A stretch of DNA of 64,000 bases from positions 281,370 through 345,369 of the IMG/VR virus record IMGVR_UViG_3300027708_000012. The stretch is one strand, 5' to 3'. The notes below the pieces were generated by a model. The model was not told where the DNA came from. It worked only from the letters and a program-made list of their open reading frames with translations, and ran no database searches. The stretch's first letter is position 1, and each line of letters opens with the position of its first letter. Below are positions 1,708 through 18,265 of this stretch, in pieces. The position numbers were made by a program, and so were the translations under genes.

Positions 1708-1716
1708 TACTATTTT

Positions 1717-2080: not shown

Positions 2081-2092
2081 CATTTAACCCAA

Positions 2093-2296: not shown

Positions 2297-2404
2297 TTAC
2301 TTAATTTCCTGTTAAAACACTATTATAGTGTATTTTATTTATCAGAGCAAACATTTTGGCTAGAAAAACTAAATACTAGTACATTAAACACCGGGAGCGA
2401 ATCG

Positions 2405-2995
2405 ATGGCATTAGTCGACTCAGTATTAAATTTAATTAACAAGCAACCAAAAGATCCCAACGCACCAAAGCCTCTAGTAGGATCACGTAGCGAACGTGAA
2501 GCCAAACTAAAAGACAAAGCAGGTATGGTAATCAGTGTATTTGCACTATTACTTGCTGTCAACAGCTGGTACGGTGGCACACTCAGCAGTAAGGTATTAA
2601 ACAATACCATTGCTTCAAACAATGTATGGGCATTTTATCAAGCTAAAAGTATCAAACAAACTCTAGCAGAACAAAGCCTTGACGATGCTACTTATCGCAA
2701 AGAAACAGAAAAAATGGCTAAATTACAAGCCAAGATCGATCGTTACGAAAGCGATCCTAAAACAGGCGAAGGCAAAAAAGAATTAATGGAAAAGGCACGT
2801 GCGTTAGAAGCAGAGCGTGACGAAGCTAAAAAACGTAGCCCATGGATTGGTTATGCCAGTACAATGTATCAATTGAGTATTGTGGTGTTGTCAGCAAGTA
2901 TTCTTGCTGTTAGCATGAGCATGTTCTGGGGTAGCTTCTTTGTTGCTGGTTTAGGTGTATTGTTGTCAGCACAAGGCGTATACTTATTTTTCTAA
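2405..2995 (+). CDS. DUF4337-like membrane protein
   Basis: Start likely ATG 2405 after GGGAG and TAAATA; TM helices with WAFYQAKSIKQ and YQLSIVVLSASIL motifs. Confidence 0.7.
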   Translation: MALVDSVLNLINKQPKDPNAPKPLVGSRSEREAKLKDKAGMVISVFALLLAVNSWYGGTLSSKVLNNTIASNNVWAFYQAKSIKQTLAEQSLDDATYRKETEKMAKLQAKIDRYESDPKTGEGKKELMEKARALEAERDEAKKRSPWIGYASTMYQLSIVVLSASILAVSMSMFWGSFFVAGLGVLLSAQGVYLFF

Positions 2996-3003
2996 TTTAA
3001 AGA

Positions 3004-3106
3004 ACCCACCTTAGGGCACGTTAGTCGTCACGGTTATAGGCGTCCGAGCAATTGAACTGCACCTCGTTAGTGTGCCGGGAGATAAAGTAACTCCCACTTT
3101 TTTGGG
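3004..3106 (+). ncRNA. Candidate structured RNA ending in a terminator
   Basis: GGCACGTTAG...TTAGTGTGCC stem with G-U pairs, internal hairpins, then GGGAG-ATAAAGTAA-CTCCC-ACTTTTTT. Confidence 0.4.
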
Positions 3107-3116
3107 TAAATATATA

Positions 3117-3821
3117 ATGAATCCAATTATATATACCCTGATAGTAACACATATTACTATCGTCTGTGTTACCCTATTTTTACATAGAGGTCAAGCACAC
3201 AAAGGAATAGAATTCCACCCAATTCTAAGTCATTTTATGCGATTCTGGTTGTGGTTAACAACTGGAATGATTACTCGTCAATGGGTAGCTATACATCGTA
3301 AACATCATGTGTTCAGTGATAAGGAAGGCGATCCGCATAGTCCGCATATATTTGGCATTTGGAATATAGTATTTAAGGGTGTTACATTTTACGCTCGAGA
3401 AGGACGTAACGCTCAAACTATGATGAGTTACGGAAAAGGTACTCCTAATGATTGGATTGAACGTAATTTGTATACCCCATATAATTTCTACGGAATTCTT
3501 TTAATGTTGATTATAGATCTTGTATTATTTGGTCTGTGGGGATTAGTAATATGGGGTATACAAATGGTGTGGATACCTTTTTGGGCAGCAGGAGTTATTA
3601 ACGGAATAGGACATTGGTATGGATATCGTAACGGTACTACAAGGGATGGGAGTCGTAACATTAGTAACATTGGCATACTTATTGGTGGCGAAGAGTTGCA
3701 CAATAATCACCACTTGGATCCAGCGAGTGTTAAACTAAGTCGGCGCTGGTTTGAATTAGATATAGGCTGGATGTGGTTAAGTTTATTTAGATTTTTAAGA
3801 CTAGCTAAACTTACACGTTAA
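3117..3821 (+). CDS. Membrane fatty acid desaturase (delta-9/DesA type)
   Basis: His boxes HRGQAH, HRKHH, HNNHH; GEELHNNHH and WFELDIGW; ATG 3117 directly after TAAATA. Confidence 0.92.
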   Translation: MNPIIYTLIVTHITIVCVTLFLHRGQAHKGIEFHPILSHFMRFWLWLTTGMITRQWVAIHRKHHVFSDKEGDPHSPHIFGIWNIVFKGVTFYAREGRNAQTMMSYGKGTPNDWIERNLYTPYNFYGILLMLIIDLVLFGLWGLVIWGIQMVWIPFWAAGVINGIGHWYGYRNGTTRDGSRNISNIGILIGGEELHNNHHLDPASVKLSRRWFELDIGWMWLSLFRFLRLAKLTR

Positions 3822-3822
3822 C

Positions 3823-4581
3823 TTATAGATTACTTGCGTATTTTGTTGCTGTTGGAGCACGTTTAGCGGCTTGTACTTTGGCATTAGCTGGTCTTTCAAA
3901 CTTGTGTGTCCATGCTCTACTGGCGGCATCTGCACTAGGGTACTCTCGTCCTATATATCTTGCACCGTCTGGCTCGGATAATGCAAAATCAATTTGTCCT
4001 TGCCAGTTATCTTTCCAACTTGGACCTAATTTTTGTTTTAATTGCGCAAATCGAGGACCGTTATGTTGAAATAATCCTCCACTAGGTAAGCCGTTAGAAT
4101 CAATAGTTTCAACTCCTGATCTAAAGCCAGACTCGTGTGCTATGTTAGCCATCATGCCTGCAATCTGTGTTATGCTCATATTCCATTTTTGTTTGCAATG
4201 ACGAGCGATATCCCGCCAAGGAACAGAACCTGCAACTTGTTTAATTTCAACTTTAGGTTTAGCTACTGGCGGCGCCTTTGCTGTTTGTACTGGTGGCAAG
4301 GATTTAGGCTTGGCCGCTGGTGTAGCAACTGCTGTTGCTTTGGCTTTTGCAATATCTGCAGGACCAGTCATTCTTGTGTCAACGCCCGGAGGGCCAAATG
4401 GTGCTCTGCTAGGTATAGATTTTGGATCTAGTTTACCTGATCCTATTTTAGCAATATCGTCTTCTGCTTCTAGTGCATCAGCAAACTGTTGAGCTGGCGA
4501 ATTAGTTTTTGGTGCTAGGCCTTTAGCTTGTAACAGATTGTCTAAATCGTCTTCTTTAATAGTAAATTCGTTTGCTCTCAT
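3823..4581 (-). CDS. Phage tail lysozyme (Phage_lysozyme2-like) domain protein
   Basis: AGMMANIAHESG...GLFQHNGPR...QIDF...FERPA. Confidence 0.8.
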   Translation of the reverse strand: MRANEFTIKEDDLDNLLQAKGLAPKTNSPAQQFADALEAEDDIAKIGSGKLDPKSIPSRAPFGPPGVDTRMTGPADIAKAKATAVATPAAKPKSLPPVQTAKAPPVAKPKVEIKQVAGSVPWRDIARHCKQKWNMSITQIAGMMANIAHESGFRSGVETIDSNGLPSGGLFQHNGPRFAQLKQKLGPSWKDNWQGQIDFALSEPDGARYIGREYPSADAASRAWTHKFERPANAKVQAAKRAPTATKYASNL

Positions 4582-4588: not shown

Positions 4589-5230
4589 TTATCGCTTTCT
4601 TAGTTCGTTGACAAAATCTAACAGTAGCGCATGATGTTTTCCATTGTGGTACTTGCCTTTCATCCAACTATAGCTATTGTACCAAAATTGTTCACTTTCT
4701 GGATGAGCGCCAATCAGTCCTATACGTCCTTTTATTATAGCCATAGGGTCGTCGTTAGCATACTTGGCAATAGTATCATAATACCCTGTACCAGTAAAGG
4801 CACAGCCATCGTACCAAAACATGTTCATTGGGGTTCCTAGCCATTCTATTTTTATGTTTTTAGCATGCGGGCGGCGAGTATCTGTATTAGGTTGTTTTAG
4901 ATACTGTACAGCATCTATATCGCCTAGTAAATTAAAATAATGTTTGCCAGCCCAATACGCCCCCATGCATATACCAAGATAATAACCACCATTAGCTATA
5001 AACTGCTTAATACGAGCACCGTTATACTTAAACGCACGATTGAAGCTACTAGCATCACCGAAGCCGCCAGGAACTGCTACAATATCTACGCCATCAAAGA
5101 AGTTGTCTTCTAATTCGTTGATGCCAAAGATTTTAAAATTATAAAAGGCACTAAGTGCCTTTATAATACCATTTCCACTCTGCACTGAACACTTAGGATC
5201 GTACAAGAATAGTGCAATTGTAGGTTTCAT
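4589..5230 (-). CDS. BPL_N / class I glutamine amidotransferase-like protein
   Basis: VPGG, YLGICMGAY, HPE motifs; start ATG 5230 overlaps upstream stop. Confidence 0.8.
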   Translation of the reverse strand: MKPTIALFLYDPKCSVQSGNGIIKALSAFYNFKIFGINELEDNFFDGVDIVAVPGGFGDASSFNRAFKYNGARIKQFIANGGYYLGICMGAYWAGKHYFNLLGDIDAVQYLKQPNTDTRRPHAKNIKIEWLGTPMNMFWYDGCAFTGTGYYDTIAKYANDDPMAIIKGRIGLIGAHPESEQFWYNSYSWMKGKYHNGKHHALLLDFVNELRKR

Positions 5231-5355
5231 TTGAATAGTGTATGTTCTGCGTTGATCCACATGATTAACAGTATTAACCATAATACTCTTAATACGTTGT
5301 CAAAAATTCGTTCGTACCAATCTAATAATGTTTTAGTTTCTTTTTGTTGTGTCAT
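5227..5355 (-). CDS. Small membrane protein (42 aa)
   Basis: MTQQKETKTLLDWYERIFDNVLRVLWLILLIMWINAEHTLFK*, ATGA overlap with next gene. Confidence 0.55.
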   Translation of the reverse strand: MTQQKETKTLLDWYERIFDNVLRVLWLILLIMWINAEHTLFK

Positions 5356-5473
5356 TTTTTACTTCTATTTGTTGTACTTCTGGCTCAATATATTTGTCCC
5401 AGACTTTCTGTCCCGAGTTCCAACCAAATACTGTACAAAATCCAATAGCAACATAAGTTAGAATAAATCCCAT
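5333..5473 (-). CDS. Small membrane protein (46 aa)
   Basis: MGFILTYVAIGFCTVFGWNSGQKVWDKYIEPEV...; AAAGGA RBS and upstream TAAATA. Confidence 0.55.
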   Translation of the reverse strand: MGFILTYVAIGFCTVFGWNSGQKVWDKYIEPEVQQIEVKNDTTKRN

Positions 5474-5515
5474 GTCTGTGTCCTTTCATTAACTACTACT
5501 ATTTAGCCGGGCCGT

Positions 5516-5538
5516 AAAAATAGGAACCAAAGTTCCTA
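5516..5538 (-). terminator. Rho-independent terminator
   Basis: TAGGAAC-TTTG-GTTCCTA-TTTTTT on minus strand. Confidence 0.7.
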
Positions 5539-5618
5539 CTGTGGATTACGGATTCCCACGACACCTTATCTTGTGCCCGATTTAAAAATGCTTCCGAAAA
5601 AATTACGGAAGCTGCTTA

Positions 5619-6263
5619 TTACTTCCCCAATAGGCTATCAACCTTTGCTTCAGCAATGTCTAAACGAGCTTCGATAGCATCTAATGCTGGATCTGCTGGA
5701 ACTGCAACTGCTTCAACAACTTGTTGAACTACTTCTGGAGCAACTTCTTCACCTGTTGCGGCTGCAATAACTTCAGCAACTGCGTCAGCGGCAGCTTGTG
5801 CTACTTCTGGAGCTGGCGTTGGCATGTCAGCAACTGCGGCGATGATAGCGGCTGTGATTGCCACTGGATCAACTACAACTTCTGGCTCTGCTACAACAAC
5901 TGCCATAACTGCGGCTGAAACAATATCAGCAACTTCTGAGTGCTCAACTGGTTCTGCTTCGTACTGTGCTGTAACAACATCAGCAACTATGTCAGCGGCT
6001 TCTGCATGATCGGCACTTGGAGATAGTGCAACTACTTCTTCAACTTCAAAAGGTGCATCATTTGCTACGGCAGCAATGATAGCATCAATGTGAGCTTCTG
6101 TTTTTTCGGCAATTAAGTGATCAACTTGAACTTCAACTAGAGACAATCGTGCGTCTAGTTCTTCGATGCTTGTGGCATTGTCTGTATTAACTGATGTACC
6201 AGTTAGTGTTGCTAACTTGGCTTCTACGGAAACTAATCTTGCGGCTAAATCTTCTAATCTCAT
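5619..6263 (-). CDS. Acidic Ala/Val/Glu-rich protein with three short coiled-coil repeats
   Basis: LxARLxxxE(A/V)(K/Q)(L/V)xxL three times; AAGGAG RBS. Confidence 0.75.
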   Translation of the reverse strand: MRLEDLAARLVSVEAKLATLTGTSVNTDNATSIEELDARLSLVEVQVDHLIAEKTEAHIDAIIAAVANDAPFEVEEVVALSPSADHAEAADIVADVVTAQYEAEPVEHSEVADIVSAAVMAVVVAEPEVVVDPVAITAAIIAAVADMPTPAPEVAQAAADAVAEVIAAATGEEVAPEVVQQVVEAVAVPADPALDAIEARLDIAEAKVDSLLGK

Positions 6264-6346: not shown

Positions 6347-7057
6347 TTAACTCCAATATCGATTATGGTATAAACTATCCCAGTAGGCTTTGTTATTGCG
6401 ATTGATAAAATTCTTAACAAGGTACTTGCCCATGCCAAGGTATCCCATCTTTTTAAATCTACGCGAGTCTTGCCCAAGGTGGTGGCGAACAATCCTAAAC
6501 TTCCTAGGATTGTATTTTTTAGATAAAAAGTAATCTTCACTTGTTAATAAGTTCTCAGGAAACCCGCCGTACTCTTCAAACTTATCTCTGCGTGTGAGCA
6601 TAAACGCACCGACCGCAAATGGACTAAAGAATTTTAGCGTATGGTTAATTAAATTAAATGCTGTGAATCCAATCTTTGCCCTAATATCCTTATCATAGCA
6701 TTTGATATTCAATCCAATAAGGTCTAGTTTTTTACGTTCAATTAATCTAACAGCATCACGAATAACAGTGGGTTTAAAAAATCGTACATCAGCATCAATG
6801 AATAAGATATAAGGTGTAGTGACTAGTCTAGCACCATTGTTTTTAGCAATACTAACAGGGCCGCCATCGATAATTTCTACATTTAAGTTACCCTTCATCA
6901 ATTGAATAACTTCACGTGTATTGTCCGTTGAACAGTCTGCAATGATGATTCTAGTGCTACCTATCATTTGATTGCGTAGGTGTGTTAATAGATAGGGAAT
7001 ATAGTTTTCCTCATTCTTACAAGGAATTACAATAGTAATCTTATCGCTGAATATCAT
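6347..7057 (-). CDS. Glycosyltransferase family 2
   Basis: TIVIPCKNEE, IIADCSTDNT, LFIDADV, SEDYFLS motifs. Confidence 0.9.
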   Translation of the reverse strand: MIFSDKITIVIPCKNEENYIPYLLTHLRNQMIGSTRIIIADCSTDNTREVIQLMKGNLNVEIIDGGPVSIAKNNGARLVTTPYILFIDADVRFFKPTVIRDAVRLIERKKLDLIGLNIKCYDKDIRAKIGFTAFNLINHTLKFFSPFAVGAFMLTRRDKFEEYGGFPENLLTSEDYFLSKKYNPRKFRIVRHHLGQDSRRFKKMGYLGMGKYLVKNFINRNNKAYWDSLYHNRYWS

Positions 7058-7224
7058 TGTTTCTTGCATTCGCCTACTACCTTAAAACTTTTAAACTTTA
7101 GTTGCCACTTCAATGTGCTTAGGACTTGCTCGCAAGTCTTTTGATCGTGGAATGTTAGTTCTACTTTTCCTGGCTGATCCGTCGGATCGTTTACGTGTAT
7201 CGCTATTAGGATCAATAACCACAT
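7054..7224 (-). CDS. Small exported protein (56 aa)
   Basis: MWLLILIAIHVNDPTDQPGKVELTFHDQKTCEQ...GECKKQ*; AGGAG RBS; ATGA overlap with GT2. Confidence 0.6.
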   Translation of the reverse strand: MWLLILIAIHVNDPTDQPGKVELTFHDQKTCEQVLSTLKWQLKFKSFKVVGECKKQ

Positions 7225-7978
7225 TGTCTTTCTCCTGTGTCCATGTAACTATCTCCCAAGTACCGTTATGATGTTCTACTAGGGCTGTACAACTTTCAAC
7301 CCAATCGCCATCATTCATATAAACAACATCATCTATGTTTTTAATTTCAGCATGATGTATGTGCCCGCATATAACACCATCAAAGCCACGCTTTTTACAA
7401 TATCCAGCAAGGTTCTTTTCAAAGTGGAACATAAAGTCCACAGCTTTCTTTACTCGCTTCTTAAGGTACTGACTAAGGCTAAAGTACCCAAAACCAAAGC
7501 GATGGCGTAGCCAATTGAACTTGCTATTAATCGATAAAATGACATCATATGCTTTGTCTCCTAAAAATGCTATCCACGGTGCTAGTCTAGTAATGCCATC
7601 AAACAAGTCACCGTGTGTAACTAAGTAATGATTGCCGTCAGCACCTATGTGTTCTATTTGATTGTGTATCTCAACGAGTCCAAAACTGAATCCATAAGGA
7701 ATCATTGGTCTTAAAAATTCGTCGTGATTTCCTGCAATATAAACGACACGAGTACCACGTTTAGCATGACCGAGAACACGACGCACCACATTAGTGTGGC
7801 TCTGTTTCCATCTCCATTTATTTTGTTGGATTCGCCAGGCATCAATTATATCTCCTACAAGGTATAGGGTATCACAAGAGTTGTGTTTAAGAAAGTTGTT
7901 TAACTTATCTGCTTGACAATCCCTTGTGCCTAAATGCACATCACTAATGAAAATGCTACGATAAGTTTTGGTTTCCAT
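7091..7978 (-). CDS. Metallophosphoesterase, PlcP/LpxH-like phospholipase C
   Basis: FISDVHLG, LVGDIID, GNHDEFLR, HGDLFD, GHIHH, GDWVESCTALVE motifs. Confidence 0.88.
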   Translation of the reverse strand: METKTYRSIFISDVHLGTRDCQADKLNNFLKHNSCDTLYLVGDIIDAWRIQQNKWRWKQSHTNVVRRVLGHAKRGTRVVYIAGNHDEFLRPMIPYGFSFGLVEIHNQIEHIGADGNHYLVTHGDLFDGITRLAPWIAFLGDKAYDVILSINSKFNWLRHRFGFGYFSLSQYLKKRVKKAVDFMFHFEKNLAGYCKKRGFDGVICGHIHHAEIKNIDDVVYMNDGDWVESCTALVEHHNGTWEIVTWTQEKDNVVIDPNSDTRKRSDGSARKSRTNIPRSKDLRASPKHIEVATKV

Positions 7979-8022: not shown

Positions 8023-8181
8023 TTACACTTGTACTACTGTCCACTTGTGTGTGAATGGTTTGCCTTCGGCCTTGTGTTTCAAGATTTTGGCGAACTCTTT
8101 CAAGCGAAGTTCGTATTGTTTCTCGGCATCGTGGTCGACGCAAGCCTTGTACAGTTTAGCTATTAGCTTTTTCTGTTTCAT
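8023..8181 (-). CDS. Small hypothetical protein (52 aa)
   Basis: [30 protein letters not shown]...; GGAGG RBS. Confidence 0.6.
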
Positions 8182-8201: not shown

Positions 8202-8801
8202 TTATTTATTCGCTAACGGATTATCAACCGCTTGTTTAATCTTGTTATCAACTTCTGCTCTTAACGCACGAATCTCAGCTTGTTGTTCTTTTTGATTCTT
8301 AACCAACTCGCGATTGATATCTTTTAGTGTAGCATCAACATCACGCTTGATTTCTTTCACAGTGCCATCGACATCGCGCTTAATTTCCTTCATTCCTGAA
8401 TCTGTTAGTCGTTGATCTGTTTTACTTGAACGCTCAACATTTTCAACAACAGCTTCTAGTCTGCGAACATCGCCTTTAAGATCGTTCTTGATGTTGTTGG
8501 TATACTCGGTCATCTTGCTAGTATTGGCATCCAACACTTCCATCTTTTTATAGATTTCAGCAAGATCAGGTGTAACATATTCCGCAATCTTTTTCTTCAT
8601 CCCCATGTAGTCTTTATACACCTCAAAGCACCCATAAAGCCCGCCCAATAATGATGACGCTAGGGTGAATGCTACCATAAGTTTGGCTGGTGTGAATTCA
8701 TAACCACCAATACTGATAACAGTATCTTTGCTGGCATACTTTTTTACAGCCGCTTCAGCTTCGTCTATTTTTGCATTGACGTCTTTAATTTCTTCTGTCA
8801 T
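8202..8801 (-). CDS. Single-TM coiled-coil protein
   Basis: One hydrophobic helix then heptad repeats ending DNPLANK. Confidence 0.8.
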
Positions 8802-8802
8802 T

Positions 8803-10893
8803 TTACTCTCCTTGCTTATATTGCATGTCTACCATTCTTTTATGTAGGCTATCGCTACTCATTTGTCGCAGTACTTGTACGTTGTCTATGACTTTTTGGC
8901 CTTTATAAACTTCTTTAGGTTCATAAAAAGCCGTATCTCTTAATACAAACGAATATGCTTCAAATCCTCTTGGTTGTGTAGCCATTGATGCAAGATCAAC
9001 ACCTGCGGCTAGATCGTTTGGTTGTACATTTCTATTAACTGTACTTGTCTGTGACTGTATATTTTCTTGCATTAACTCAAAACGCTGTTGCATCATCATT
9101 TCTGACAATGGATTGCCAGCCTTACCCATGCCGCCAAAACTAGCAACTTGCATTGGTGGTGTTTCTACTTCCATAATACGTTCTTGTAATCGTGGCTGAT
9201 ATACAGGTGCGGTTTGTGTAGGTGCTGGACTTATACTAGATAAATTTAATGACCCTAGTGGATTGTAGGCAAACGGATTTCGACTAACTGTTAATCCTGT
9301 ACCACTACTGGCTTGTTGTTGGGATTCTGTTGCTGCAGGTGCTGTAGGTTTTAACATAGCTACTGATGTTGACTGTGTTTCTTGTTGTGCTTGTTGCGGT
9401 GGTGTATATGCAGCTTGTTGAATCTGTACAACACTTCCATTAGATTGTTGTTGTACTTCTTGTTGTACTTCTTGTTGTACTTGTTGTACTACACGACTAG
9501 TCTGTTGCTGTTGCGTAGTAGTCTGTTGCTGTTGTTGCGTATTTTGACTTGTTTGAATTGCGGTCTGCTGGCTAGCTTGTGTATTTTGACTGGAGAACTG
9601 TGCGGCTGCTGTGGCACTGTTAGCACTCATATCTTGATTCATACTGATTGCAAGATTACTAGCGGCTTGTGAACTTTGTTGGGTATTTTCAAATGCTTTG
9701 GCAGCATTTTGTACGGCTGATTGTTGTATTGCTTGTTCTTTGGCCTGTGCTGATTTGACCACACTCATTGCTAATTTGCTAGGGCCACCTCCGCTGGTTG
9801 CAGAGCCTGCTTGTTGTGGGCCTGCCTGACTTGGTCCAGCACTTGGTGGAGGTGCAGATTGTGCTACTTGAGGAGGACCGCCGGCTGGTTGAGGTTGTGT
9901 TGGTGCAGGCCCAGCTTGTTGCGGGCTAGGCTGTGCCGGATTATCTTGTGCTACCGCAGGATTTTGATTTGGATCTTGCCCCGGTTGCTGAGTTGGTAGT
10001 CCTTGTTGTGCAGGTGCTTGCTGTGCAGGTTGTTGTGCTTGCTGTTGTGGACTTGCTTGAGCTAATGCAGGTGCCGCATCGGCTACAGCAGGGGGTGCCG
10101 CCGCTGGTGCAGGTGATGTATAGTTCATTGCAGGTACAAATGAAGTAGCACTTGCATTTGAAACTGTAGATCCTAGTATAGAATTTTTAACAGTAGCTAA
10201 AGCGTATCCTGGGCAAGTAGGACTTGATAATGGGTCGTTTATACACGGATCGGGCTTTACTGTATATTTCAAGCTAAAATTAACATTAATAATTTCTGGA
10301 CCATAATTGCCAGCCCAATAATTATTGTCTCGGCCTACAAAGCCTACCTGTGCATTACTAAAGCTAGTTGCTGGTACAGGACTAGAAAAAGTTTCACTGA
10401 AGTTAAAGTTAGTCCAGTTATATTTCCTATTTGTTTGACTAGTATAATCATAGTTTGCTGCTAGTCCTCCACCGCTATTATAGAACTTAACATACGCACC
10501 TAAATAATCTTGACGTCCATCATCCCAGCCGTTGCCGTTCTTAGCAGTAAACCCGAAATTAAATCCTCCAAGTTGTACACCACTTCCGCCTATAGACAAT
10601 GCCTTGTTTATACTGACAATTTGATTTAAGTCTGTAGTGCCGTATGAATAGTTAATAACACCATCTGGTCTTATACTTGGTTTAGGACCACAGTTACCAG
10701 CCTGACCGGCCTGGAAGCACAGTGTATTAACATAGACACCGTTGTTCCAAATGCTAGTCGTATCTGTAGGCGCAGTACCGTTATTAATTAAATTACCGGT
10801 AGTAGCGTCTACTTGAGCATTAGTGGAAGCCGAATATACGATAAGCAATAACGCCCAGTATACTACCGATACCAACTTTCTTATAAGTGTCAT
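8803..10893 (-). CDS. Exported protein with beta-sandwich domain and Gln/Pro-rich linker
   Basis: Signal-peptide-like N-terminus; DPCINDPLSSPTCPGY motif; long Q/P/A/S low-complexity region. Confidence 0.8.
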   Translation of the reverse strand: MTLIRKLVSVVYWALLLIVYSASTNAQVDATTGNLINNGTAPTDTTSIWNNGVYVNTLCFQAGQAGNCGPKPSIRPDGVINYSYGTTDLNQIVSINKALSIGGSGVQLGGFNFGFTAKNGNGWDDGRQDYLGAYVKFYNSGGGLAANYDYTSQTNRKYNWTNFNFSETFSSPVPATSFSNAQVGFVGRDNNYWAGNYGPEIINVNFSLKYTVKPDPCINDPLSSPTCPGYALATVKNSILGSTVSNASATSFVPAMNYTSPAPAAAPPAVADAAPALAQASPQQQAQQPAQQAPAQQGLPTQQPGQDPNQNPAVAQDNPAQPSPQQAGPAPTQPQPAGGPPQVAQSAPPPSAGPSQAGPQQAGSATSGGGPSKLAMSVVKSAQAKEQAIQQSAVQNAAKAFENTQQSSQAASNLAISMNQDMSANSATAAAQFSSQNTQASQQTAIQTSQNTQQQQQTTTQQQQTSRVVQQVQQEVQQEVQQQSNGSVVQIQQAAYTPPQQAQQETQSTSVAMLKPTAPAATESQQQASSGTGLTVSRNPFAYNPLGSLNLSSISPAPTQTAPVYQPRLQERIMEVETPPMQVASFGGMGKAGNPLSEMMMQQRFELMQENIQSQTSTVNRNVQPNDLAAGVDLASMATQPRGFEAYSFVLRDTAFYEPKEVYKGQKVIDNVQVLRQMSSDSLHKRMVDMQYKQGE

Positions 10894-12187
10894 CTTCACT
10901 CACCTCTGTTTCTTTTGGTAATTTTTCTGGATTTGATTCCCACTCTACTTTAGCTTGGGCTCCAATCTTACCTTCGTACGGGCATGGTGTGCCTGCTGCC
11001 ATCATAGCATCAAATACACGACGATCTTGACACATAGTAGCAACTGCGGCAACTTTCATCCCCATGTCGTATAATGTCTTGCTTAATTTTAATCGTTCAC
11101 AATTCATATCACGAACTGTGCCGCCTGAACTAACACCAAAGATTTGTGTTTGTACTGAACCGCTTGTGCCTGTTGTACATAGGTCAGCATTACCACCTGA
11201 CATCATTGCTGGTGCAACGGCTGTTGGTGGAGGTTGAATAACACGCTGAGTAATATCACTTGTATTAACATTGTTATTTGTCATTGAACCACTGTTAATA
11301 TTCTGATTAACGTTATTATTTGCATTAGTACTTGTACTAGCATTAGTATTATTATTGTTATTGGTCATTGTACCGTTATTGGTATTCTGATTAATATTAG
11401 TCATCGTTCCTGTGTTAATATTGTTATTAGTATTGCTAGTAGTAGCTGTTGTAGTGTTGATATTACGATTGGTCATATCACCTGTATTAACATTATTATT
11501 TGTGTTAACACTGGTACTCGTATTAACATTGTTGTTATTGTTAGTCATTGTACCATACTGGTAGTTAGTATTGGTGCTTGTACTAGTGTTAACATTGTTG
11601 TTATTGTTAGTATTAACACTAGTGCTAGAACTAACATTATTATTGTTATAAGTCATTGTACCTGAATTAATGTTATTATTGGTGTTGACATTATTGCTAG
11701 TACTTGCGCTGACATTGTTGTTATTGTACGTCATTGTACCAGTATTAATATTGTTATTGGTGTTAACATTATTGCTAGTACTGGTACTTGTATTGACATT
11801 GTTGTTATTGTTAGTCATTGTACCTGTATTAACATTATTATTATTAAATGTCTGAGTACCGCTATTAACGTTATTGTTGTTATTAGTGTAGGTTACTGCG
11901 CCACTCATAACGTTGTTATTGTTATTATTGTTGGTCATAGTACCACTATTAACGTTATTGTTGTTATTAGTGTTAGTTGTACCGCCACTTAGCACAGTAT
12001 TATTATTTGTAGTTGTAGTACCGCTATTAACATTATTTGTGTTAATTGTACTTGTGCTAACGCTTGTACTATTAGTATCTACGAGACTTTTAGAATCGTA
12101 GCCGCCTTGGTTAATCACAGTTTGAGGTAGCACGGTGGTGCTTGATAGTACCAACATTAATGCTGGCATTATATTTTTAATACGCAT
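10820..12187 (-). CDS. Exported Asn/Thr-repeat protein with Cys-containing C-terminal domain and TM anchor
   Basis: Signal-like N-terminus; repeats NNNNVN(S/T)GTMT; PPPTAVAP...CERLKLSKTL...GTPCP; C-terminal hydrophobic helix. Confidence 0.85.
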   Translation of the reverse strand: MRIKNIMPALMLVLSSTTVLPQTVINQGGYDSKSLVDTNSTSVSTSTINTNNVNSGTTTTNNNTVLSGGTTNTNNNNNVNSGTMTNNNNNNNVMSGAVTYTNNNNNVNSGTQTFNNNNVNTGTMTNNNNNVNTSTSTSNNVNTNNNINTGTMTYNNNNVSASTSNNVNTNNNINSGTMTYNNNNVSSSTSVNTNNNNNVNTSTSTNTNYQYGTMTNNNNNVNTSTSVNTNNNVNTGDMTNRNINTTTATTSNTNNNINTGTMTNINQNTNNGTMTNNNNNTNASTSTNANNNVNQNINSGSMTNNNVNTSDITQRVIQPPPTAVAPAMMSGGNADLCTTGTSGSVQTQIFGVSSGGTVRDMNCERLKLSKTLYDMGMKVAAVATMCQDRRVFDAMMAAGTPCPYEGKIGAQAKVEWESNPEKLPKETEVSEDDTYKKVGIGSILGVIAYRIFGFH

Positions 12188-12247
12188 GGCTTCGCTCCAA
12201 ATTGCATTAGTATTTAAGTGAGCAATTGTACGAGTAATACTACTGTA

Positions 12248-12934
12248 TTATTTTTTGAATTCTATTATTGCGGATTTTACCAAGCTATCAATACTGTTTA
12301 TTAATGGGATTTCTTGATATTGTTTTTCTCTGACAACTAATGGTATTTCTGTACAGCCTAAAACCACAGCTTGCGCACCTTTTTCAATTAACGATTTAAC
12401 CACAGTCATCAGCATGCCATGTGCTAATATAGGCTTGTTTGCTTTGATCAAATCTATTCCAGGCTGAACATAGTCTTCCATTTCTTTGCTAGTTGGTGTT
12501 ATGCAAGTCCATCCTAATTTGGACAAATGATTGTTATATAAGCCTAGTTGCATTGTAGCCCTAGTTCCCATTACACCAATAGTACCAGTTATGTTTTGAG
12601 CTCGTAATTCATCTGCTACACTATCTACAATATGCGTAATTGGCACACCTAGTGCTGTTAATCTGTCATACCAAAAATGTGCTGTATTGCAAGGAATTAC
12701 AATGTGATCGCAATCTGCATTTTTTAAACCTTGTATCCCACGTTTAAGTTTTTCCCAAGGCAAATCGTCTTTGTTGAGTAAACTTGTACTACGATCTGGA
12801 ACTGTAGGATCACTCCATAGTATTACTGGAATATGTTCTTGATCGCAGGTTGCTGGAGTTTGTTCAGTTAGGCGTACTAGGAATTCTGCACTGGCCGCTG
12901 GCCCCATTCCACCAAGTACACCTAGGCGTTTCAT
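12248..12934 (-). CDS. Aspartate/glutamate racemase
   Basis: GVLGGMGP, IPCNTAH, LGCTEIPL; both catalytic Cys present. Confidence 0.92.
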   Translation of the reverse strand: MKRLGVLGGMGPAASAEFLVRLTEQTPATCDQEHIPVILWSDPTVPDRSTSLLNKDDLPWEKLKRGIQGLKNADCDHIVIPCNTAHFWYDRLTALGVPITHIVDSVADELRAQNITGTIGVMGTRATMQLGLYNNHLSKLGWTCITPTSKEMEDYVQPGIDLIKANKPILAHGMLMTVVKSLIEKGAQAVVLGCTEIPLVVREKQYQEIPLINSIDSLVKSAIIEFKK

Positions 12935-13536
12935 TTTTTATTGTATAGTAAACTGGATGCCACTATCATAACAGTCTGTGCCATCTCAATATCTGAAGGT
13001 TTTTCCTTCCATCCGACACTAATTTGCCCGATAAACAAACCTGGTTCTGCTGGAACACTTATGCGACACATGTAGTTTACACCAGATGCTTTATAAGTAA
13101 ATCCAATATAGCTTTGAGGTCTGTTATAGTCTGCACAGGGAATTTTGCCTGACATTAGACCAATAACATCTTCATTGTTATTTAGATTTTTCGTTAACAG
13201 GCCAACATCTGCACCGTCGTGAGTTTTATCATGGCCGCCACTACGACTGGTTAAGTAAGTTAATTTTCTAGTGTTAAGCACAGTATTAACTTCAAACAAT
13301 GCTACTAGTTCTGCATCTGTATTTTTCAGTATAAAGTTTGCGGCTTCTTCATACTTGCCATTCATTTTGGGTAGTGCTTGTTGAGCACGATAACTGGCCA
13401 TAAAGTTATCTTTTTCGCTGTATACGATCCAGCCTCCAAAAGTAAGGAGGCATAGAAACACAACCGTAAATAGGCGAAAAGGACTTTCGCCTATGAACTT
13501 CAATAGTTCAAGCAGGAACTCTTTCAGCTTGTCCAT
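12931..13536 (-). CDS. Single-TM protein with periplasmic GAF-like domain (T4 holin T-like)
   Basis: N-terminal TM, two Cys, YMCRISVP...FIGQISVGW resembles holin T C-terminal domain. Confidence 0.5.
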   Translation of the reverse strand: MDKLKEFLLELLKFIGESPFRLFTVVFLCLLTFGGWIVYSEKDNFMASYRAQQALPKMNGKYEEAANFILKNTDAELVALFEVNTVLNTRKLTYLTSRSGGHDKTHDGADVGLLTKNLNNNEDVIGLMSGKIPCADYNRPQSYIGFTYKASGVNYMCRISVPAEPGLFIGQISVGWKEKPSDIEMAQTVMIVASSLLYNKK

Positions 13537-14788
13537 GGTCCACGTCTGCTACAAATGCTGTTACACCCATATTACCAATAACATGGCTGGCTGTGCGAAT
13601 CATATCCATTAGAGGATCAACAGCAATAAACAAGACCAATACTGCTTCGCTTGGTAGTTTTAACAAGTCACAAACAACTGCCACTGTAGCCACTGTTAGA
13701 ATACCTGTAGTACCTGCACTTGCTAGTCCTGCTAAAATGCTACCAAGCAATATAACAATCAATCCACTGGCACCTAATGATAAATCATAAATGCCAGCAA
13801 TAAACGCTGTGGCAATGGCATAGTAAACAATACTTCCAATACGGTTAACAGTAAAGCTCAAGGGAGTAGTTAGTTCTACGGCATCTTTATTATAGCCTAG
13901 TTTAACTAAAGCTTCTTGGCTGTAAGGAATACAAGCTAGGCTTGAACGACTACTAACAGCAATCATAAATGTTTCTTGTATGCCATGCATTGTGTCTATA
14001 ATACTCTTGCGAGATTTCCAGGCAATATATGCTGTAGCAATAGCAACAATAATAAATCCGCCCACAGTCTGCTGAATAATAAAATCAACCATAGTACCAA
14101 AAATGCCTACGCCTACCTTGGCTACTTGTGTTGATATCATGGCAAATAGTGCAATTGGTAAGAAGTAGTTTAAGAACTTGAAAATACTAATACTGGCCTG
14201 TTGGACACTTTTGAAGATATCAATCATAACTTCTTGTCCCACAGACTTTATGTTGCCCAGGGCAATACCGAAGATTAAACAGAAAATAACAATCTTAAGA
14301 CTTTCACCAGATTCTAAACTTTGAAAGATATTTTCTGGAATAAACTTCTGTATCATTGCACCAGCACTTGGCTTAGGTACAACTAGCATTGGCTCTTTTA
14401 GTGTAATTGACATTTCGGTCCCTTGGTCTTTGTTGTTGACCAATGCACCAAGTTGTACTTTCTTTTCGGGAGTCATTTCGCTGCCAGTTAATACTGTCGA
14501 ACCAACGCCAACGACAGAAGCCATGAACATACTAACAACAAAGCCAATGACAATCTTTTTAATCATCGACTGGCTACCTTCTTTCTGTAGCAGTCCAACT
14601 ACACCAACTAGAATAGTGGCAAATAAGAAAGGTAATACAACAACCTTTAATAAACTGATGTAGATACTACCAATAGATTCTAATGCCATAACTTCGTGAG
14701 GCAAATATACCCCGCCAGCTACAGCCAACAGAATACTGCCTAAAATAGTCCAAGGACTAGCTAAAAATTTCTTTATATCGATTTTCAT
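13508..14788 (-). CDS. Dicarboxylate/amino acid:cation symporter (DAACS/GltP family)
   Basis: About 9 TM; IPENIF, SSRSSLA, AVDPLMDMIRTASHVIGN motifs. Confidence 0.9.
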   Translation of the reverse strand: MKIDIKKFLASPWTILGSILLAVAGGVYLPHEVMALESIGSIYISLLKVVVLPFLFATILVGVVGLLQKEGSQSMIKKIVIGFVVSMFMASVVGVGSTVLTGSEMTPEKKVQLGALVNNKDQGTEMSITLKEPMLVVPKPSAGAMIQKFIPENIFQSLESGESLKIVIFCLIFGIALGNIKSVGQEVMIDIFKSVQQASISIFKFLNYFLPIALFAMISTQVAKVGVGIFGTMVDFIIQQTVGGFIIVAIATAYIAWKSRKSIIDTMHGIQETFMIAVSSRSSLACIPYSQEALVKLGYNKDAVELTTPLSFTVNRIGSIVYYAIATAFIAGIYDLSLGASGLIVILLGSILAGLASAGTTGILTVATVAVVCDLLKLPSEAVLVLFIAVDPLMDMIRTASHVIGNMGVTAFVADVDHGQAERVPA

Positions 14789-15606
14789 TTGTTTTCCTTG
14801 TATCTATTCATTAATTTTTTAACATCGATGTCACGGTATTCACTGGAAATGACAAAGTTAGCAATGCCTAATAATTGTAAGCAATTGGGTCTAACAGCCA
14901 CGCCAATTTGATCTACGCTGTCACTAATTGTGATTGTTTTTGTAGTCAAGGCCGCTTCAGGTTTTTCAAAACTAATTTTCTTAATTTCAAACTCGTCACG
15001 ATAAGCGGCATTAATTTTACCACTTGTAACATTTGCTATGACCACGCCCCAGTCATCTTCTGGTAAGAATGTAGCTTTGGGAAAGTTGATACGAGCATAA
15101 GTGTCGTAGCTGGAGTTACGTATAAAACTAATCTTACCATTGAAGTCTCGAATAACTTCATAAGGTTCACGTCCTTTAGTATTCTGACTTAACCAAAGAC
15201 GATTGATAATTATGCTTTGTTTTAGTGTTACATAAGGAGCACTGAATCTCAATGCTTGTAGTCGAGGTCCGGTAATACTTAATTTGCTAATAGCAATGTC
15301 AGCACGACCATCGCGAACTTGTTCTGCCACTTCAGCAAAGCTGGCAGCATCTCTACGGAATTCTACTGGCACGCCTAGTTGTTTGCCAATGCTACGAGCA
15401 ATGTCAACATCTAGTCCGTGTAGGTTATCGTCCTTACCACTAAAGAATGGAGGACTGTCTTTGCCGTTCATGGCCACCACTAATTTGCCTGCTTTTTTAA
15501 TAGCGGCAATGTCAGTGGGCAAAGGAACTTTAGAGTCGGGCATTTGTGCATAGCTAGGAAGTATAGCTAACACGCTGAATGTTAAGGATATTAGTAAGTT
15601 TTTCAT
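14785..15606 (-). CDS. Amino-acid substrate-binding protein (SBP family 3)
   Basis: Signal peptide; PPFF...GLDVDIARSIG..LGV; GRADIAIS..SIT.PR...FSAPY. Confidence 0.9.
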   Translation of the reverse strand: MKNLLISLTFSVLAILPSYAQMPDSKVPLPTDIAAIKKAGKLVVAMNGKDSPPFFSGKDDNLHGLDVDIARSIGKQLGVPVEFRRDAASFAEVAEQVRDGRADIAISKLSITGPRLQALRFSAPYVTLKQSIIINRLWLSQNTKGREPYEVIRDFNGKISFIRNSSYDTYARINFPKATFLPEDDWGVVIANVTSGKINAAYRDEFEIKKISFEKPEAALTTKTITISDSVDQIGVAVRPNCLQLLGIANFVISSEYRDIDVKKLMNRYKENK

Positions 15607-17584: not shown

Positions 17585-18265
17585 TTATGCTATTTCAGGG
17601 AACAAGCAATCCTGTATGAAAACCTGTACATCCTCTTCACTAAGCCCTAAGCTAACCATAACTTTAGGAGTATGTGGGTTTTTCTTCTGATTCTCACAAT
17701 AGTAATTCTGAGCGTCAGTAGTATTAGGATGTGTACGTTCGGTTTCTTTTACTGTGGCCAAATAGTGTGTTAGATTCTTACGGGCCATGGCAAGTATTTG
17801 CTCTAGTTCTGCTTCATCGCTGACATTTCCCGCGGCCACCATAGAACCTGTAAAAATACGCTCTGCCCAATCTGGTAACTTGCGAGTTTTATTCCACTCT
17901 AGACGACGAGCTTCTTCAGCAAACCAATCAATCATCGGATGTTCGCTGTCGCCTGCAGGACTAAAATCATGGAAACAGCCTGTGATTTTATTTTTACCAG
18001 CTACAACATCAAATCCAAAGATAGGTGCAGGGTTATCTGTATGCGGGAAAATACAGCAATGCATCATCCATAGACCTTTAGTCTCGCGGGCATCAACTAC
18101 ATCAATATGAGCCCTACGATAAGCACTACTTGTCCAAACTTTGTTTACCCAACCTGGTTGATTAAAACGTTCCATACCAGGCTCTTGAATAATACTACCA
18201 GTTGCATACAACTGACTTTCAAAGTATTCTTCAATTTTAATTAGTGTGTCCCAGACATTACTCAT
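17585..18265 (-). CDS. Ferredoxin-dependent bilin reductase (PcyA/PcyX-like)
   Basis: RRAHIDVVD, MMHCCIFP, PIFGFDVVAG, DFSP, RKLPDWA, QNYYCENQKKNPHT motifs. Confidence 0.88.
   Translation of the reverse strand: MSNVWDTLIKIEEYFESQLYATGSIIQEPGMERFNQPGWVNKVWTSSAYRRAHIDVVDARETKGLWMMHCCIFPHTDNPAPIFGFDVVAGKNKITGCFHDFSPAGDSEHPMIDWFAEEARRLEWNKTRKLPDWAERIFTGSMVAAGNVSDEAELEQILAMARKNLTHYLATVKETERTHPNTTDAQNYYCENQKKNPHTPKVMVSLGLSEEDVQVFIQDCLFPEIA

What the first reader, a model, noticed from the sequence alone, without database searches (positions are those of the whole stretch)
8202..12187. Three-gene exported module with an Asn-rich amyloid-like repeat protein
Seen: overlapping operon under one TAAATA promoter: (1) signal peptide, about 280 aa of N/T/S repeats (NNNNVNTGTMT), a Cys-containing domain and C-terminal TM; (2) signal peptide, beta-sandwich and very Gln-rich tract; (3) TM coiled coil. 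Known: N/Q-rich imperfect repeats typify functional amyloids and beta-solenoids. Inference: a phage-built fibre or envelope-spanning complex on the infected cell (superinfection exclusion, aggregation or receptor masking).
Basis: partly seen in the sequence, partly recalled or inferred. Interest (0 to 1): 0.7.

Follow-up and report, generated by a model that had tools for sequence, protein, structure and literature searches.

The report
Exported three-protein module of phage lysis cassettes
Three neighbouring genes of a 345-kb freshwater jumbo phage encode exported envelope proteins that recur together in hundreds of aquatic phages, usually inside or next to the cell-lysis genes, so they look like an undescribed accessory part of how these phages open their hosts.

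Summary
Three abutting minus-strand genes (A 12187-10820, B 10893/10899-8803, C 8801-8202) follow a TAAATA motif. The same motif class heads this phage's virion-endolysin-spanin operon and its holin gene.

- A: signal peptide, about 275 aa of Asn/Thr/Ser repeats with a 26-residue period (modelled as a beta-solenoid, moderate confidence), a four-Cys domain (pLDDT above 90) and a short hydrophobic tail.
- B: signal peptide, an FBA/CBM-like jelly roll, about 350 aa of P/Q-rich low complexity and a conserved C-terminus.
- C: one membrane segment, a coiled coil and an invariant C-terminal NPL motif.

None has a Pfam family. The trio is virus-only and widespread (at least 597 IMG/VR loci; 1,224 clusters at 50% identity). 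Among 62 loci with enough downstream DNA, 61 have B and 59 have C, in genomes from 32 kb to 350 kb.

In about a dozen loci the trio sits in the lysis cassette. This phage also carries a canonical holin-endolysin-Rz-Rz1 cassette, so the trio is not its only spanin.

Best reading: a new exported accessory envelope complex of the late lysis programme. The data do not support superinfection exclusion, curli-type secretion or a virion role. The function is inferred, not shown.

The parts
12211..12216 (-). TAAATA late-promoter-like motif, 29 nt upstream of the A start codon
   Evidence: Read directly from the sequence. The motif is about 9-fold enriched upstream of ORFs genome-wide. It also sits at -31 and -36 before the virion-GH19-Rz-Rz1 operon and the holin gene. 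No transcription start site was mapped.
10820..12187 (-). Gene A (455 aa): signal peptide, Asn/Thr/Ser repeat stalk, four-Cys domain, hydrophobic tail
   Evidence: ORF. It matches phrog_20531, function unknown, at 2.5e-12. There is no Pfam, NCBIfam or PADLOC hit. AF2 model.
11234..12055 (-). A residues ~45-318: imperfect 26-residue (12 + 14) Asn-rich repeats, modelled as a beta-solenoid
   Evidence: Autocorrelation z is 9.7 at lag 26; tandem-repeat periods are 78, 36 and 42 nt. AF2 places strand pairs in residues 59-233, at pLDDT 53-76 over 59-200 and under 50 beyond. VIA-align top matches are SufBD-type beta-helices at Z 11-14.7, with the CsgA fibril at Z 7.9. The length of this region ranges from 0 to 384 aa in homologues.
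10892..11230 (-). A residues ~320-432: conserved PPTAxAP hinge plus four-Cys domain (beta-hairpin and four helices)
   Evidence: pLDDT is 90-98. It is 50-59% identical to proteins of Pelagibacter phages. The family has 1,224 clusters at 50% identity. No match in PDB by fold or profile, or in named AFDB or Atlas clusters.
10823..10888 (-). A C-terminal hydrophobic tail, encoded by the same DNA as the B signal peptide in another frame
   Evidence: AF2 models a helix at 434-452. Across the family the tail is present in 55 of 63 loci where A overlaps B by at least 50 nt, and in 0 of 14 loci without that overlap.
8803..10899 (-). Gene B (696-698 aa): signal peptide, jelly-roll domain, P/Q-rich tether with one long helix, conserved C-terminal region ending in MVDMQYK
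   Evidence: ORF; start-site analysis; 1,383 homologues of the N-terminal domain; AF2 model.
10249..10812 (-). B residues ~28-215: FBA/CBM-like beta-sandwich (putative glycan-binding domain)
   Evidence: pLDDT is 90-98. Foldseek against PDB gives 1e-6 to the Fbs1/Fbs2/FBG3 sugar-binding domains and 1e-4 to CBM4, CBM6, CBM16 and CBM22. The family profile hits F-box FBA chains at 3e-4. Atlas feature neighbours are DUF642, FBA and CBM_4_9.
8806..9108 (-). B residues ~596-696: conserved C-terminal region with the family-wide h..MV..QY end motif
   Evidence: Alignment consensus and the end motif in nearly all 77 B homologues. It is modelled only at pLDDT 50-75.
8202..8801 (-). Gene C (199 aa): charged N-terminus, GG..FT..K box, one membrane segment (aa 41-59), coiled coil, invariant C-terminal NPL (8214-8222)
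   Evidence: ORF and hydropathy. NPL and one Phe are invariant in the 37-sequence alignment. Database hits are coiled-coil noise only. Topology is not settled by the positive-inside rule.
8023..8181 (-). 52-aa basic ORF with an AAGGAGG ribosome-binding site directly after C; possibly a fourth gene of the unit
   Evidence: ORF and sequence. It has its own TAAATA 27 nt upstream, inside the end of C. It was not followed up in other loci.

Best explanation
A, B and C are a phage-specific module exported by the Sec pathway. It belongs to the late lysis programme but is distinct from holin, endolysin and spanin.

Shown:
- The three genes are co-oriented, overlapping or abutting, and lie behind a late-type TAAATA motif.
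- A and B carry signal peptides throughout the family.
- A has a confidently folded four-Cys domain, as expected for periplasmic disulfides.
- B has a lectin/CBM-like jelly roll.
- C is a single-pass membrane coiled-coil protein with an invariant C-terminal NPL.
- The trio is syntenic in nearly all related loci and repeatedly sits inside lysis cassettes.

Inferred mechanism:
- C is anchored in the inner membrane with its coiled coil in the periplasm, as in an i-spanin.
- A is held at the inner membrane by its C-terminal tail and projects the Cys domain and the Asn-rich stalk outward.
- B binds a wall or envelope glycan through its jelly roll and reaches the membrane-proximal partners through its long P/Q-rich tether and conserved C-terminus.
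- Together they form a link from the inner membrane to the wall or outer membrane. Once holin and endolysin have fired, this link either helps finish envelope breakdown alongside the spanins or sets its timing.

The Asn-rich and Gln-rich stretches are variable-length spacers, not the functional core.
For: Synteny:
- Of 62 IMG/VR loci with at least 4 kb downstream of A, 61 have B directly downstream and 59 have C.
- The same order occurs in Pelagibacter phages HTVC115P, HTVC023P, HTVC202P, Mosig and Baldr.

Export:
- The signal-peptide rule fires on 98% of A and 91% of B homologues, against 13% of other ORFs.
- Two Cys are invariant and two nearly invariant in the A domain.

Lysis context:
- In L016, L017 and L078 the order is Rz - Rz1 - GH19 - A - B - C, followed by a two-TM ORF. 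One nucleotide separates the GH19 stop from the A start.
- In HTVC023P the C gene overlaps the M15 endolysin start.
- In Mosig a GTA_holin_3TM gene directly precedes A.
- In MW202481 a holin-like gene and a lysozyme gene follow the module.
- In L063, L069, L044, L038, L079 and L086 small TM ORFs and a GH19 or Hydrolase_2 gene lie within 2 kb.
- In HTVC202P and Baldr the trio lies immediately upstream of the large terminase gene. From general knowledge, that is where lambda and T7 keep their lysis and spanin genes.
- About 20 of 85 loci have a recognisable peptidoglycan hydrolase in the fetched 14 kb.

Promoter class: the same TAAATA motif precedes this phage's own virion-GH19-Rz-Rz1 operon and its holin gene.

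Virus-only distribution: there were 20 hits in 185,579 genomes, all on metagenome-assembled contigs. Atlas neighbours are viral.

Signs of transcription: exact-match contigs of A and B occur in three lake metatranscriptomes.
Against: - In the window itself the module is not next to the lysis genes. The canonical cassette lies about 95 kb away. The nearest wall hydrolase is a Phage_lysozyme2 protein 3.6 kb downstream, beyond LpxH-like and GT2 genes.
- Neighbourhood is not function: in most of the 85 loci no lysis gene was recognised in the fetched DNA.
- No physical interaction was predicted. The complex job scored 0.00, which the tool says counts neither for nor against binding.
- The topology of C is unresolved. 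Flanking charges lean slightly the wrong way for an N-in orientation.
- The hydrophobic tail of A could be a by-product of its overlap with the B signal peptide.
- The metatranscriptome contigs could derive from contaminating DNA.
- No homologue has been studied experimentally.
Confidence: 0.45

Rival explanations
1. The trio is a stand-alone spanin equivalent. C plays the i-spanin role, and A and B replace the outer-membrane lipoprotein, so the complex itself disrupts or fuses the outer membrane in the last step of lysis.
For: - C has i-spanin architecture: an N-terminal membrane segment followed by a coiled coil.
- In HTVC202P and Baldr the trio sits directly before the large terminase gene.
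- A lipobox scan of nearly the whole 32-kb HTVC202P genome found no credible lipoprotein gene, so that phage has no obvious Rz1.
- Several loci place the trio between holin-like genes and an endolysin with no recognisable Rz/Rz1 nearby.
Against: - The window's own genome carries a canonical GH19 - Rz - Rz1 (lipobox VAAGC) - holin cassette.
- L016, L017, L078 and CRP-810 carry Rz/Rz1-type pairs directly next to the trio.
- Neither A nor B has a lipobox.
- C matches no PHROG spanin family.
Confidence: 0.15
2. The trio is a lysis-timing device, a periplasmic sensor or antiholin comparable in logic to T4 RI/T. C would interact with the holin in the membrane, and the exported A and B would report the state of the wall or a superinfection.
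For: - The module is embedded in cassettes that already have holin, endolysin and spanin. From general knowledge of phage lysis, regulation is the main remaining known role in such cassettes.
- Its parts resemble the T4 pair in outline: exported soluble proteins plus a bitopic membrane protein with a large extracytoplasmic part (PMC8385771 and PMC11413866, seen as abstracts).
- It is often flanked by small holin-like TM ORFs.
Against: - There is no sequence or fold similarity to T, RI or RIII.
- The proteins are far larger and more extended than known antiholins.
- The tether lengths are highly variable, which fits an avidity or tethering role better than a switch.
Confidence: 0.15
3. One reading: a fibre or coat on the infected cell for superinfection exclusion, aggregation or receptor masking, built from an amyloid-like Asn-rich protein.
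For: - All parts are exported, and B has a lectin-like domain that could bind surface glycans.
- The repeat region of A is regular and modelled as a beta-solenoid, with curli CsgA among the weaker structural matches.
- Released at lysis, such proteins could coat debris and so spare progeny phage. This last point is inference.
Against: - The module has a late-type promoter and is coupled to lysis genes rather than to early or lysogenic expression.
- There is no route across the outer membrane: no CsgG or CsgF in this genome or in five other carrier genomes.
- No exclusion or defence family matched.
- The repeat is absent or short in most homologues (median 54 aa, range 0-384).
- pLDDT of the solenoid is only 53-76.
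Confidence: 0.12
4. The three proteins are ordinary virion parts, such as fibres or decoration proteins, whose hydrophobic N-termini are not signal peptides.
For: - CBM-like jelly rolls, beta-helices and coiled coils are common in tail fibres; fibre and tailspike entries appear among the weaker structural matches.
- In HTVC115P and seven loci a tail-assembly-chaperone gene lies directly upstream of A.
Against: - Signal-peptide features are near-universal in A and B.
- The A domain has four conserved Cys, which suits an oxidising compartment.
- No PHROG structural family matched.
- C has a membrane segment.
Confidence: 0.04

Closest known systems
Two-component spanins (lambda Rz/Rz1, T7 gp18.5/18.7)
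   Same: Both are late, envelope-directed gene sets with overlapping or abutting genes in or next to lysis cassettes. C shares the i-spanin layout of an N-terminal membrane segment plus a coiled coil. The modelled proteins are long enough to cross the periplasm.
   Different: The trio has no lipoprotein partner, since neither A nor B has a lipobox. It has three proteins (up to six in one clade) instead of two. There is no sequence match to spanin families. It coexists with genuine Rz/Rz1 in this genome and sits adjacent to them in L016, L017, L078 and CRP-810.
T4 lysis-inhibition set (holin T, antiholin RI, RIII)
   Same: Both combine a bitopic membrane protein that has a sizeable extracytoplasmic part with exported soluble partners. 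Both are associated with lysis genes.
   Different: There is no sequence or fold similarity. The proteins here are much larger, rich in low complexity and carry a lectin-like domain. No link to superinfection is shown.
Curli CsgA and other beta-solenoid functional amyloids
   Same: The repeat region of A has imperfect strand-turn-strand repeats rich in Asn. Its model is a stacked beta-solenoid, and CsgA fibrils appear among the structural matches (Z 6-8).
   Different: There is no Curlin_rpt match and no CsgB/E/F/G in this genome. The best structural matches are SufBD-type beta-helices rather than curli. The repeat is attached to a globular Cys domain and a membrane tail, and it is dispensable across the family.
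Fbs1/FBA and CBM4/6/22 jelly-roll sugar-binding domains
   Same: The N-terminal domain of B shares the fold (Foldseek 1e-6) and gives a weak profile match (3e-4). It probably binds a glycan.
   Different: The context differs completely: an exported phage protein with no F-box and no catalytic module. The ligand and binding residues are unknown.
Phage periplasmic exclusion proteins (T4 Sp/Imm, T5 Llp)
   Same: These too are small sets of exported or membrane phage proteins acting in the envelope.
   Different: From general knowledge those are early or prophage-expressed genes, and Llp is a lipoprotein. The trio shows no homology to them, has a late-type promoter and has lysis-gene neighbours.

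Membership tests
Two-component spanin | i-spanin: N-terminal membrane segment with a periplasmic coiled coil | tested here: inconclusive
   C has one hydrophobic segment followed by a coiled coil. Its orientation is not settled by flanking charges: K+R averages 1.7 on the N side and 2.6 on the C side.
Two-component spanin | o-spanin: small outer-membrane lipoprotein with a lipobox Cys | tested here: not met
   A and B have signal-peptidase-I-type signal peptides and no lipobox. The genome's real lipobox protein lies in the separate cassette at genome 185638-185919.
Two-component spanin | Sequence membership in Rz/Rz1 families | tested here: not met
   PHROG hits for C are coiled-coil noise only. 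By contrast, the genome's Rz and Rz1 hit phrog_1152 and phrog_456.
Two-component spanin | Location in the lysis cassette | tested here: inconclusive
   Met in about a dozen loci. Not met in this window, where the cassette is about 95 kb away.
Curli / type VIII secretion amyloid | Curlin repeat family (PF07012) in the subunit | tested here: not met
   No Pfam hit for A at E up to 0.1.
Curli / type VIII secretion amyloid | CsgG/CsgF outer-membrane pore encoded alongside | tested here: not met
   PF03783 and PF10614 are absent from the own genome. PF03783 is also absent from Mosig, HTVC115P, HTVC023P, HTVC202P and a 352-kb relative.
Curli / type VIII secretion amyloid | Imperfect strand-turn-strand repeats forming a beta-solenoid | tested here: met
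   26-residue period at z 9.7. The AF2 model has strand pairs and matches beta-helices at Z up to 14.7, but only at pLDDT 53-76 over residues 59-200.
Curli / type VIII secretion amyloid | Forms extracellular amyloid fibres | not testable with these tools
   This needs ThT or Congo-red binding assays and electron microscopy.
TonB (the name given to the B homologue in MW202481) | TonB C-terminal domain and an uncleaved N-terminal anchor | tested here: not met
   No Pfam family in that protein or in window B. The name probably reflects only the Pro-rich linker.
OmpA family (the name given to the A homologue in CRP-810) | OmpA-like peptidoglycan-binding domain | tested here: not met
   No Pfam hit in CRP-810 gp53 or in window A.
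FBA/CBM galactose-binding-like lectin fold (B N-terminal domain) | Jelly-roll beta-sandwich of this superfamily | tested here: met
   Foldseek against PDB gives 1.2e-6 to 7e-6 for the Fbs1/Fbs2/FBG3 domains. The family profile hits F-box FBA chains at 2.9e-4. Atlas neighbours agree.
FBA/CBM galactose-binding-like lectin fold (B N-terminal domain) | Conserved sugar-binding residues and a demonstrated ligand | not tested
   No residue-level comparison was made. A glycan array or wall-binding assay is needed.
Known anti-phage defence or exclusion systems (PADLOC) | Match to any component model | tested here: not met
   A and B have no hits. C has only coiled-coil-type matches (ZorA tail, LeoA, JetC) at 1e-5 to 1e-2.

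The most novel reading that the evidence does not exclude
A-B-C, with three further exported proteins in one clade and a lipoprotein in some loci, is a fourth functional class of phage lysis machinery alongside holin, endolysin and spanin. It would be an exported assembly linking the inner membrane to the wall or outer membrane, built from three protein families with no described relatives. It would be used by a large share of phages of aquatic Proteobacteria, including SAR11, roseobacter and freshwater hosts. In carriers with no Rz/Rz1, such as HTVC202P, it would also be the missing outer-membrane step.
Probability: 0.3. Interest if true: 0.8.

Novelty: new variant of a known kind. Interest (0 to 1): 0.65.

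Why it matters
Roughly one phage of Gram-negative hosts in seven has no recognisable spanin (bioRxiv 10.1101/515445, abstract seen). The lysis genes of the most abundant marine phages, such as pelagiphages, are largely unannotated.

Here are three orphan protein families that always travel together. They are exported, occupy up to about 8% of a 32-kb phage genome, and keep turning up inside lysis cassettes. That makes a concrete, testable candidate for an undescribed step or control point in host-cell opening.

It would also give names to thousands of hypothetical proteins in marine and freshwater viromes. It would correct misleading database labels ('tonB', 'OmpA family', 'lysozyme'). The B jelly roll and the A Cys domain are new envelope-binding parts that could be characterised.

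Tried and rejected
1. Spanin replacement. This was my working idea until a lipobox scan found a canonical GH19 - Rz - Rz1 - holin cassette in the same genome, and Rz/Rz1 pairs adjacent to the trio in L016, L017, L078 and CRP-810. I demoted it to a rival.

2. The missing curli subunit. Papers on Melnitz and the pelagimyophages report phage CsgGF pores without CsgA/B (PMC9004378). However, CsgG and CsgF are absent from this genome, and CsgG is absent from five other carrier genomes. Rejected.

3. Complex prediction. A four-chain job (B N-terminal domain, B C-terminal region, A Cys domain, C) scored 0.00. The tool states that this is no evidence either way.

4. Structure and profile searches of the A Cys domain. 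Foldseek against PDB found nothing below E 5. AFDB clusters returned only unnamed homologues, Atlas only viral hypotheticals, and the PDB profile search returned nothing at E up to 1.

5. Searches with C returned only coiled-coil look-alikes, including HA2 and fusion-protein heptads. The nearest named cluster was the Mu releasin family (Atlas score 0.73), and I treated it as a lead only.

6. Host chromosome or prophage edge. I suspected this at first because of the tmRNA, transporter and racemase genes. The record is a 345-kb virus contig, 94% complete, with phage genes throughout.

7. Length co-variation of A, B and C. Spearman correlations were 0.3-0.7. They are confounded by relatedness, so I did not use them.

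8. The CRP-810 'lysozyme' as lysis context. That gene proved to be the C homologue itself, so I withdrew it as evidence.

I rebuilt the alignment without them.

Full report
WHERE THE WINDOW LIES. The window is the last 64 kb of a 345,369-bp IMG/VR virus record rated 94% complete. It carries Hsp70, ribonucleotide reductase, an Mtd_N/pectate-lyase-like fibre, a subtilase and many host-like metabolic genes. It is therefore a jumbo phage rather than a chromosome. Near-identical DNA is held in several freshwater metagenomes.

THE OBSERVATION.
- A is 12187-10820 (455 aa).
- B is 10899-8803. Its likelier start is the ATG at 10893, which follows a GAGGTGA box.
- C is 8801-8202 (199 aa).
- A and B overlap by 74-80 nt, and one nucleotide separates B from C.

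A TAAATA motif lies 29 nt upstream of A. Genome-wide it is found in 79 of 369 upstream regions, against about 9 expected, and 12 of 18 TATAAATA sites lie upstream of ORFs. The same motif sits at -31 before the operon that runs into the endolysin and spanin genes, and at -36 before the holin gene. It therefore looks like a late promoter of the T4 type.

A is the most Asn-rich ORF in the genome and B the most Gln-rich. The repeats in A have a 26-residue period made of 12 + 14 residues (z 9.7).

THE THREE PROTEINS. None has a Pfam or NCBIfam family. A hits one PHROG of unknown function.

Protein A (AlphaFold2 with a 76-row alignment):
- The four-Cys domain (residues 338-420) is a beta-hairpin plus four helices at pLDDT 90-98.
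- The repeat region contains strand pairs: residues 59-200 at pLDDT 53-76, and lower (under 50) from about 203 to 335.
- The structural aligner that does not depend on Foldseek matches the repeat region to SufBD-type beta-helices (Z 11-14.7, about 3 Å rmsd over 180 residues). Curli CsgA is among the weaker matches at Z 6-8.
- The Cys domain matches nothing named in PDB, AFDB or the Atlas.

Protein B:
- It has a signal-peptide helix and a beta-sandwich (residues 30-215) at pLDDT 90-98.
- Next come a disordered P/Q-rich stretch, one 72-residue helix, a second disordered stretch and a weakly modelled conserved C-terminus.
- The sandwich is a lectin/CBM jelly roll. Foldseek gives 1e-6 to the sugar-binding domains of Fbs1, Fbs2 and FBG3, and 1e-4 to CBM4, CBM6, CBM16 and CBM22. 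The family profile also hits FBA chains at 3e-4.

Protein C:
- It has a charged N-terminus, a conserved GG..FT..K box, one glycine-rich hydrophobic segment and a coiled coil of very variable length. The C-terminal NPL is invariant.
- Its orientation could not be settled from flanking charges.

THE MODULE ELSEWHERE.
- Distribution of A: the Cys domain is 50-59% identical to proteins of Pelagibacter podophages and myophages. It is more distantly related to proteins of Roseobacter phages and Ralstonia phage RSP15. An exhaustive search found 1,224 clusters at 50% identity.
- Distribution of B: the N-terminal domain has 1,383 relatives.
- Loci fetched: a scan of IMG/VR found at least 597 loci, of which 80 were fetched.
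- Synteny: using family HMMs, 61 of the 62 loci with at least 4 kb downstream of A have B directly downstream. It usually overlaps the end of A by 62-74 nt. Fifty-nine have C.
- Conserved end motifs: B proteins end in a conserved h..MV..QY motif, and C proteins end in NPL.
- Two layouts exist. In one, A, a long B and C are contiguous. In the other (26 loci), a short B is followed by three further exported proteins before C.
- Export: a crude signal-peptide rule fires on 98% of A, 91% of B and 99% of those extra proteins, against 13% of other ORFs.
- Virus-only: a scan of 185,579 prokaryote genomes found only 20 hits, all on short contigs of metagenome-assembled genomes.

TWO DETAILS OF THE FAMILY.
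- The Asn/Thr/Ser/Gly/Gln-rich stretch between the signal peptide and the Cys domain of A is general, but its length runs from 0 to 384 aa with a median of 54. The conspicuous Asn repeat is therefore an expandable spacer.
- The hydrophobic tail of A is present in 55 of 63 loci where A overlaps the B signal-peptide coding by at least 50 nt. It is present in none of the 14 loci without that overlap. The same DNA encodes both hydrophobic segments in two frames. Whether the tail is a selected membrane anchor or a by-product of the overlap is open.

GENOMIC CONTEXT. The module keeps company with lysis genes.
- In L016, L017 and L078 the order is Rz-like, lipoprotein Rz1-like, GH19 endolysin, A, B, C, then a two-TM ORF. 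One nucleotide separates GH19 from A.
- In HTVC023P, C overlaps the start of an M15 endolysin.
- In Mosig a GTA_holin_3TM gene precedes A.
- In MW202481 a holin-like gene and a lysozyme gene follow the module.
- In L063, L069, L044, L038, L079 and L086 small TM ORFs and a GH19 or Hydrolase_2 gene lie within 2 kb.
- In HTVC202P and Baldr the trio lies directly before the large terminase gene.
- About 20 of 85 loci have a recognisable wall hydrolase in the fetched DNA.

Other neighbours are a mixed bag: DNA polymerase B, Hsp20, ferritin, PhoH and a class-3 lipase.

WHY IT IS NOT SIMPLY A SPANIN. A lipobox scan of the whole genome found a canonical cassette about 95 kb from the window. It contains:
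- a GH19 endolysin (phrog_181, 1e-75);
- an Rz-like protein (phrog_1152);
- a 93-aa lipoprotein overlapping it by 4 nt (phrog_456, 5e-9);
- a holin (phrog_3427).

The phage thus already has all three classical functions. CRP-810 likewise has an unannotated lipoprotein ORF between a TM-coiled-coil gene and A. By contrast, nearly the whole 32-kb HTVC202P genome shows no credible lipoprotein gene. A spanin-like role in some carriers therefore cannot be excluded.

OTHER READINGS TESTED.
- Defence or exclusion: PADLOC gives nothing for A and B, and only coiled-coil noise for C.
- Curli: published work reports CsgGF pores without CsgA/B in Melnitz and the pelagimyophages (PMC9004378). CsgG and CsgF are absent from this genome, and CsgG is absent from five other carrier genomes.
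- Physical complex: a four-chain prediction gave no answer.
- Transcription: short contigs identical to parts of A and B occur in three lake metatranscriptomes. This is compatible with transcription but does not prove it.

VERDICT. The finding is a real, strongly conserved, virus-specific exported module made of three orphan protein families. The best-supported reading is an accessory envelope complex of the late lysis programme (confidence 0.45).

The inferred model is as follows. C and the tail of A sit in the inner membrane. The B jelly roll sits on a wall or envelope glycan. Long spacers lie between them. The assembly acts with, or times, the holin-endolysin-spanin sequence.

The proposed purposes (exclusion, aggregation, masking, amyloid fibre) find no support. 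Everything about function rests on architecture and neighbourhood, and no homologue has been studied.

Noticed in passing
window 1663-2128 (-): A two-piece (permuted) tmRNA gene of the betaproteobacterial type lies inside the phage record (Rfam RF04321 at 126 bits and RF01850 at 106 bits; ARAGORN gives the tag peptide). Published work describes phage-borne two-piece ssrA in Melnitz and its relatives.
   Followed up: partly
own genome G000:C1:184999-187034 (-), locus L110: This is a canonical lysis cassette: GH19 endolysin, Rz-like protein, overlapping lipoprotein Rz1-like protein and holin. It lies about 95 kb from the window. A TAAATA motif heads the operon that runs into the endolysin and spanin genes, and another precedes the holin gene.
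   Followed up: yes
window 10823-10899 (-), and L008-L087: The hydrophobic C-terminal tail of A and the signal peptide of B are encoded by the same 60-80 nt in two reading frames. Across the family the tail exists only where this overlap exists (55 of 63 against 0 of 14).
   Followed up: partly
window 8023-8181 (-): A 52-aa basic ORF with a strong AAGGAGG ribosome-binding site follows C directly. It has its own TAAATA inside the end of C.
   Followed up: no
window 12248-15606 (-): A run of host-like genes lies just upstream of the module: a solute-binding protein (SBP_bac_3), a sodium:dicarboxylate-family symporter, a 201-aa membrane protein (phrog_31287) and a CuyB-like amino-acid racemase. 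This looks like a transport and metabolism set carried by the phage.
   Followed up: no
window 17585-18806 (-): Heme oxygenase and a ferredoxin-dependent bilin reductase lie side by side. This pair is best known from cyanophages, yet here it is in a freshwater jumbo phage whose tmRNA is of betaproteobacterial type. The bilin reductase also recurs near the module in relatives (L030).
   Followed up: no
window 2207-4581 and 6347-7978: Several further envelope-related genes lie within 8 kb downstream of the module: a DUF4337 membrane protein, a fatty-acid desaturase, a Phage_lysozyme2-domain protein (3823-4581), a GT2 glycosyltransferase and an LpxH-like phosphoesterase. The LpxH-like and DUF4337 genes also recur near the module in close relatives.
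   Followed up: partly
L003 (Roseobacter phage CRP-810), L006 (MW202481): Three database names are not borne out. CRP-810 gp51 'lysozyme' is the C homologue, gp53 'OmpA family' is the A homologue, and MW202481 'transport protein tonB' is the B homologue. None has the named Pfam domain. CRP-810 also has an unannotated lipoprotein ORF at L003:4651-4911.
   Followed up: yes
L034-L083 (26 loci), e.g. L063:8222-9487: One clade inserts three extra exported proteins (about 166, 128 and 140 aa, all with signal peptides) between a short B and C, making a six-gene unit. None has a Pfam family.
   Followed up: partly
L038:10055-10420, L047:7659-8018, L086:6144-6536: A family of lipoproteins sharing a ..SFYDDNESLLAV.. 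motif after the lipobox Cys lies directly beside the module in three loci. It could be an outer-membrane partner in those phages.
   Followed up: no
six loci, e.g. L059:2937-3668: A class-3 lipase gene lies within 4 kb of the module in six loci. A lipase near lysis genes recalls mycobacteriophage LysB, but this was not examined.
   Followed up: no
L016:2739-3346 and 5007-5716: One relative carries two tandem Rz/Rz1-like pairs upstream of its GH19 - A - B - C run.
   Followed up: no
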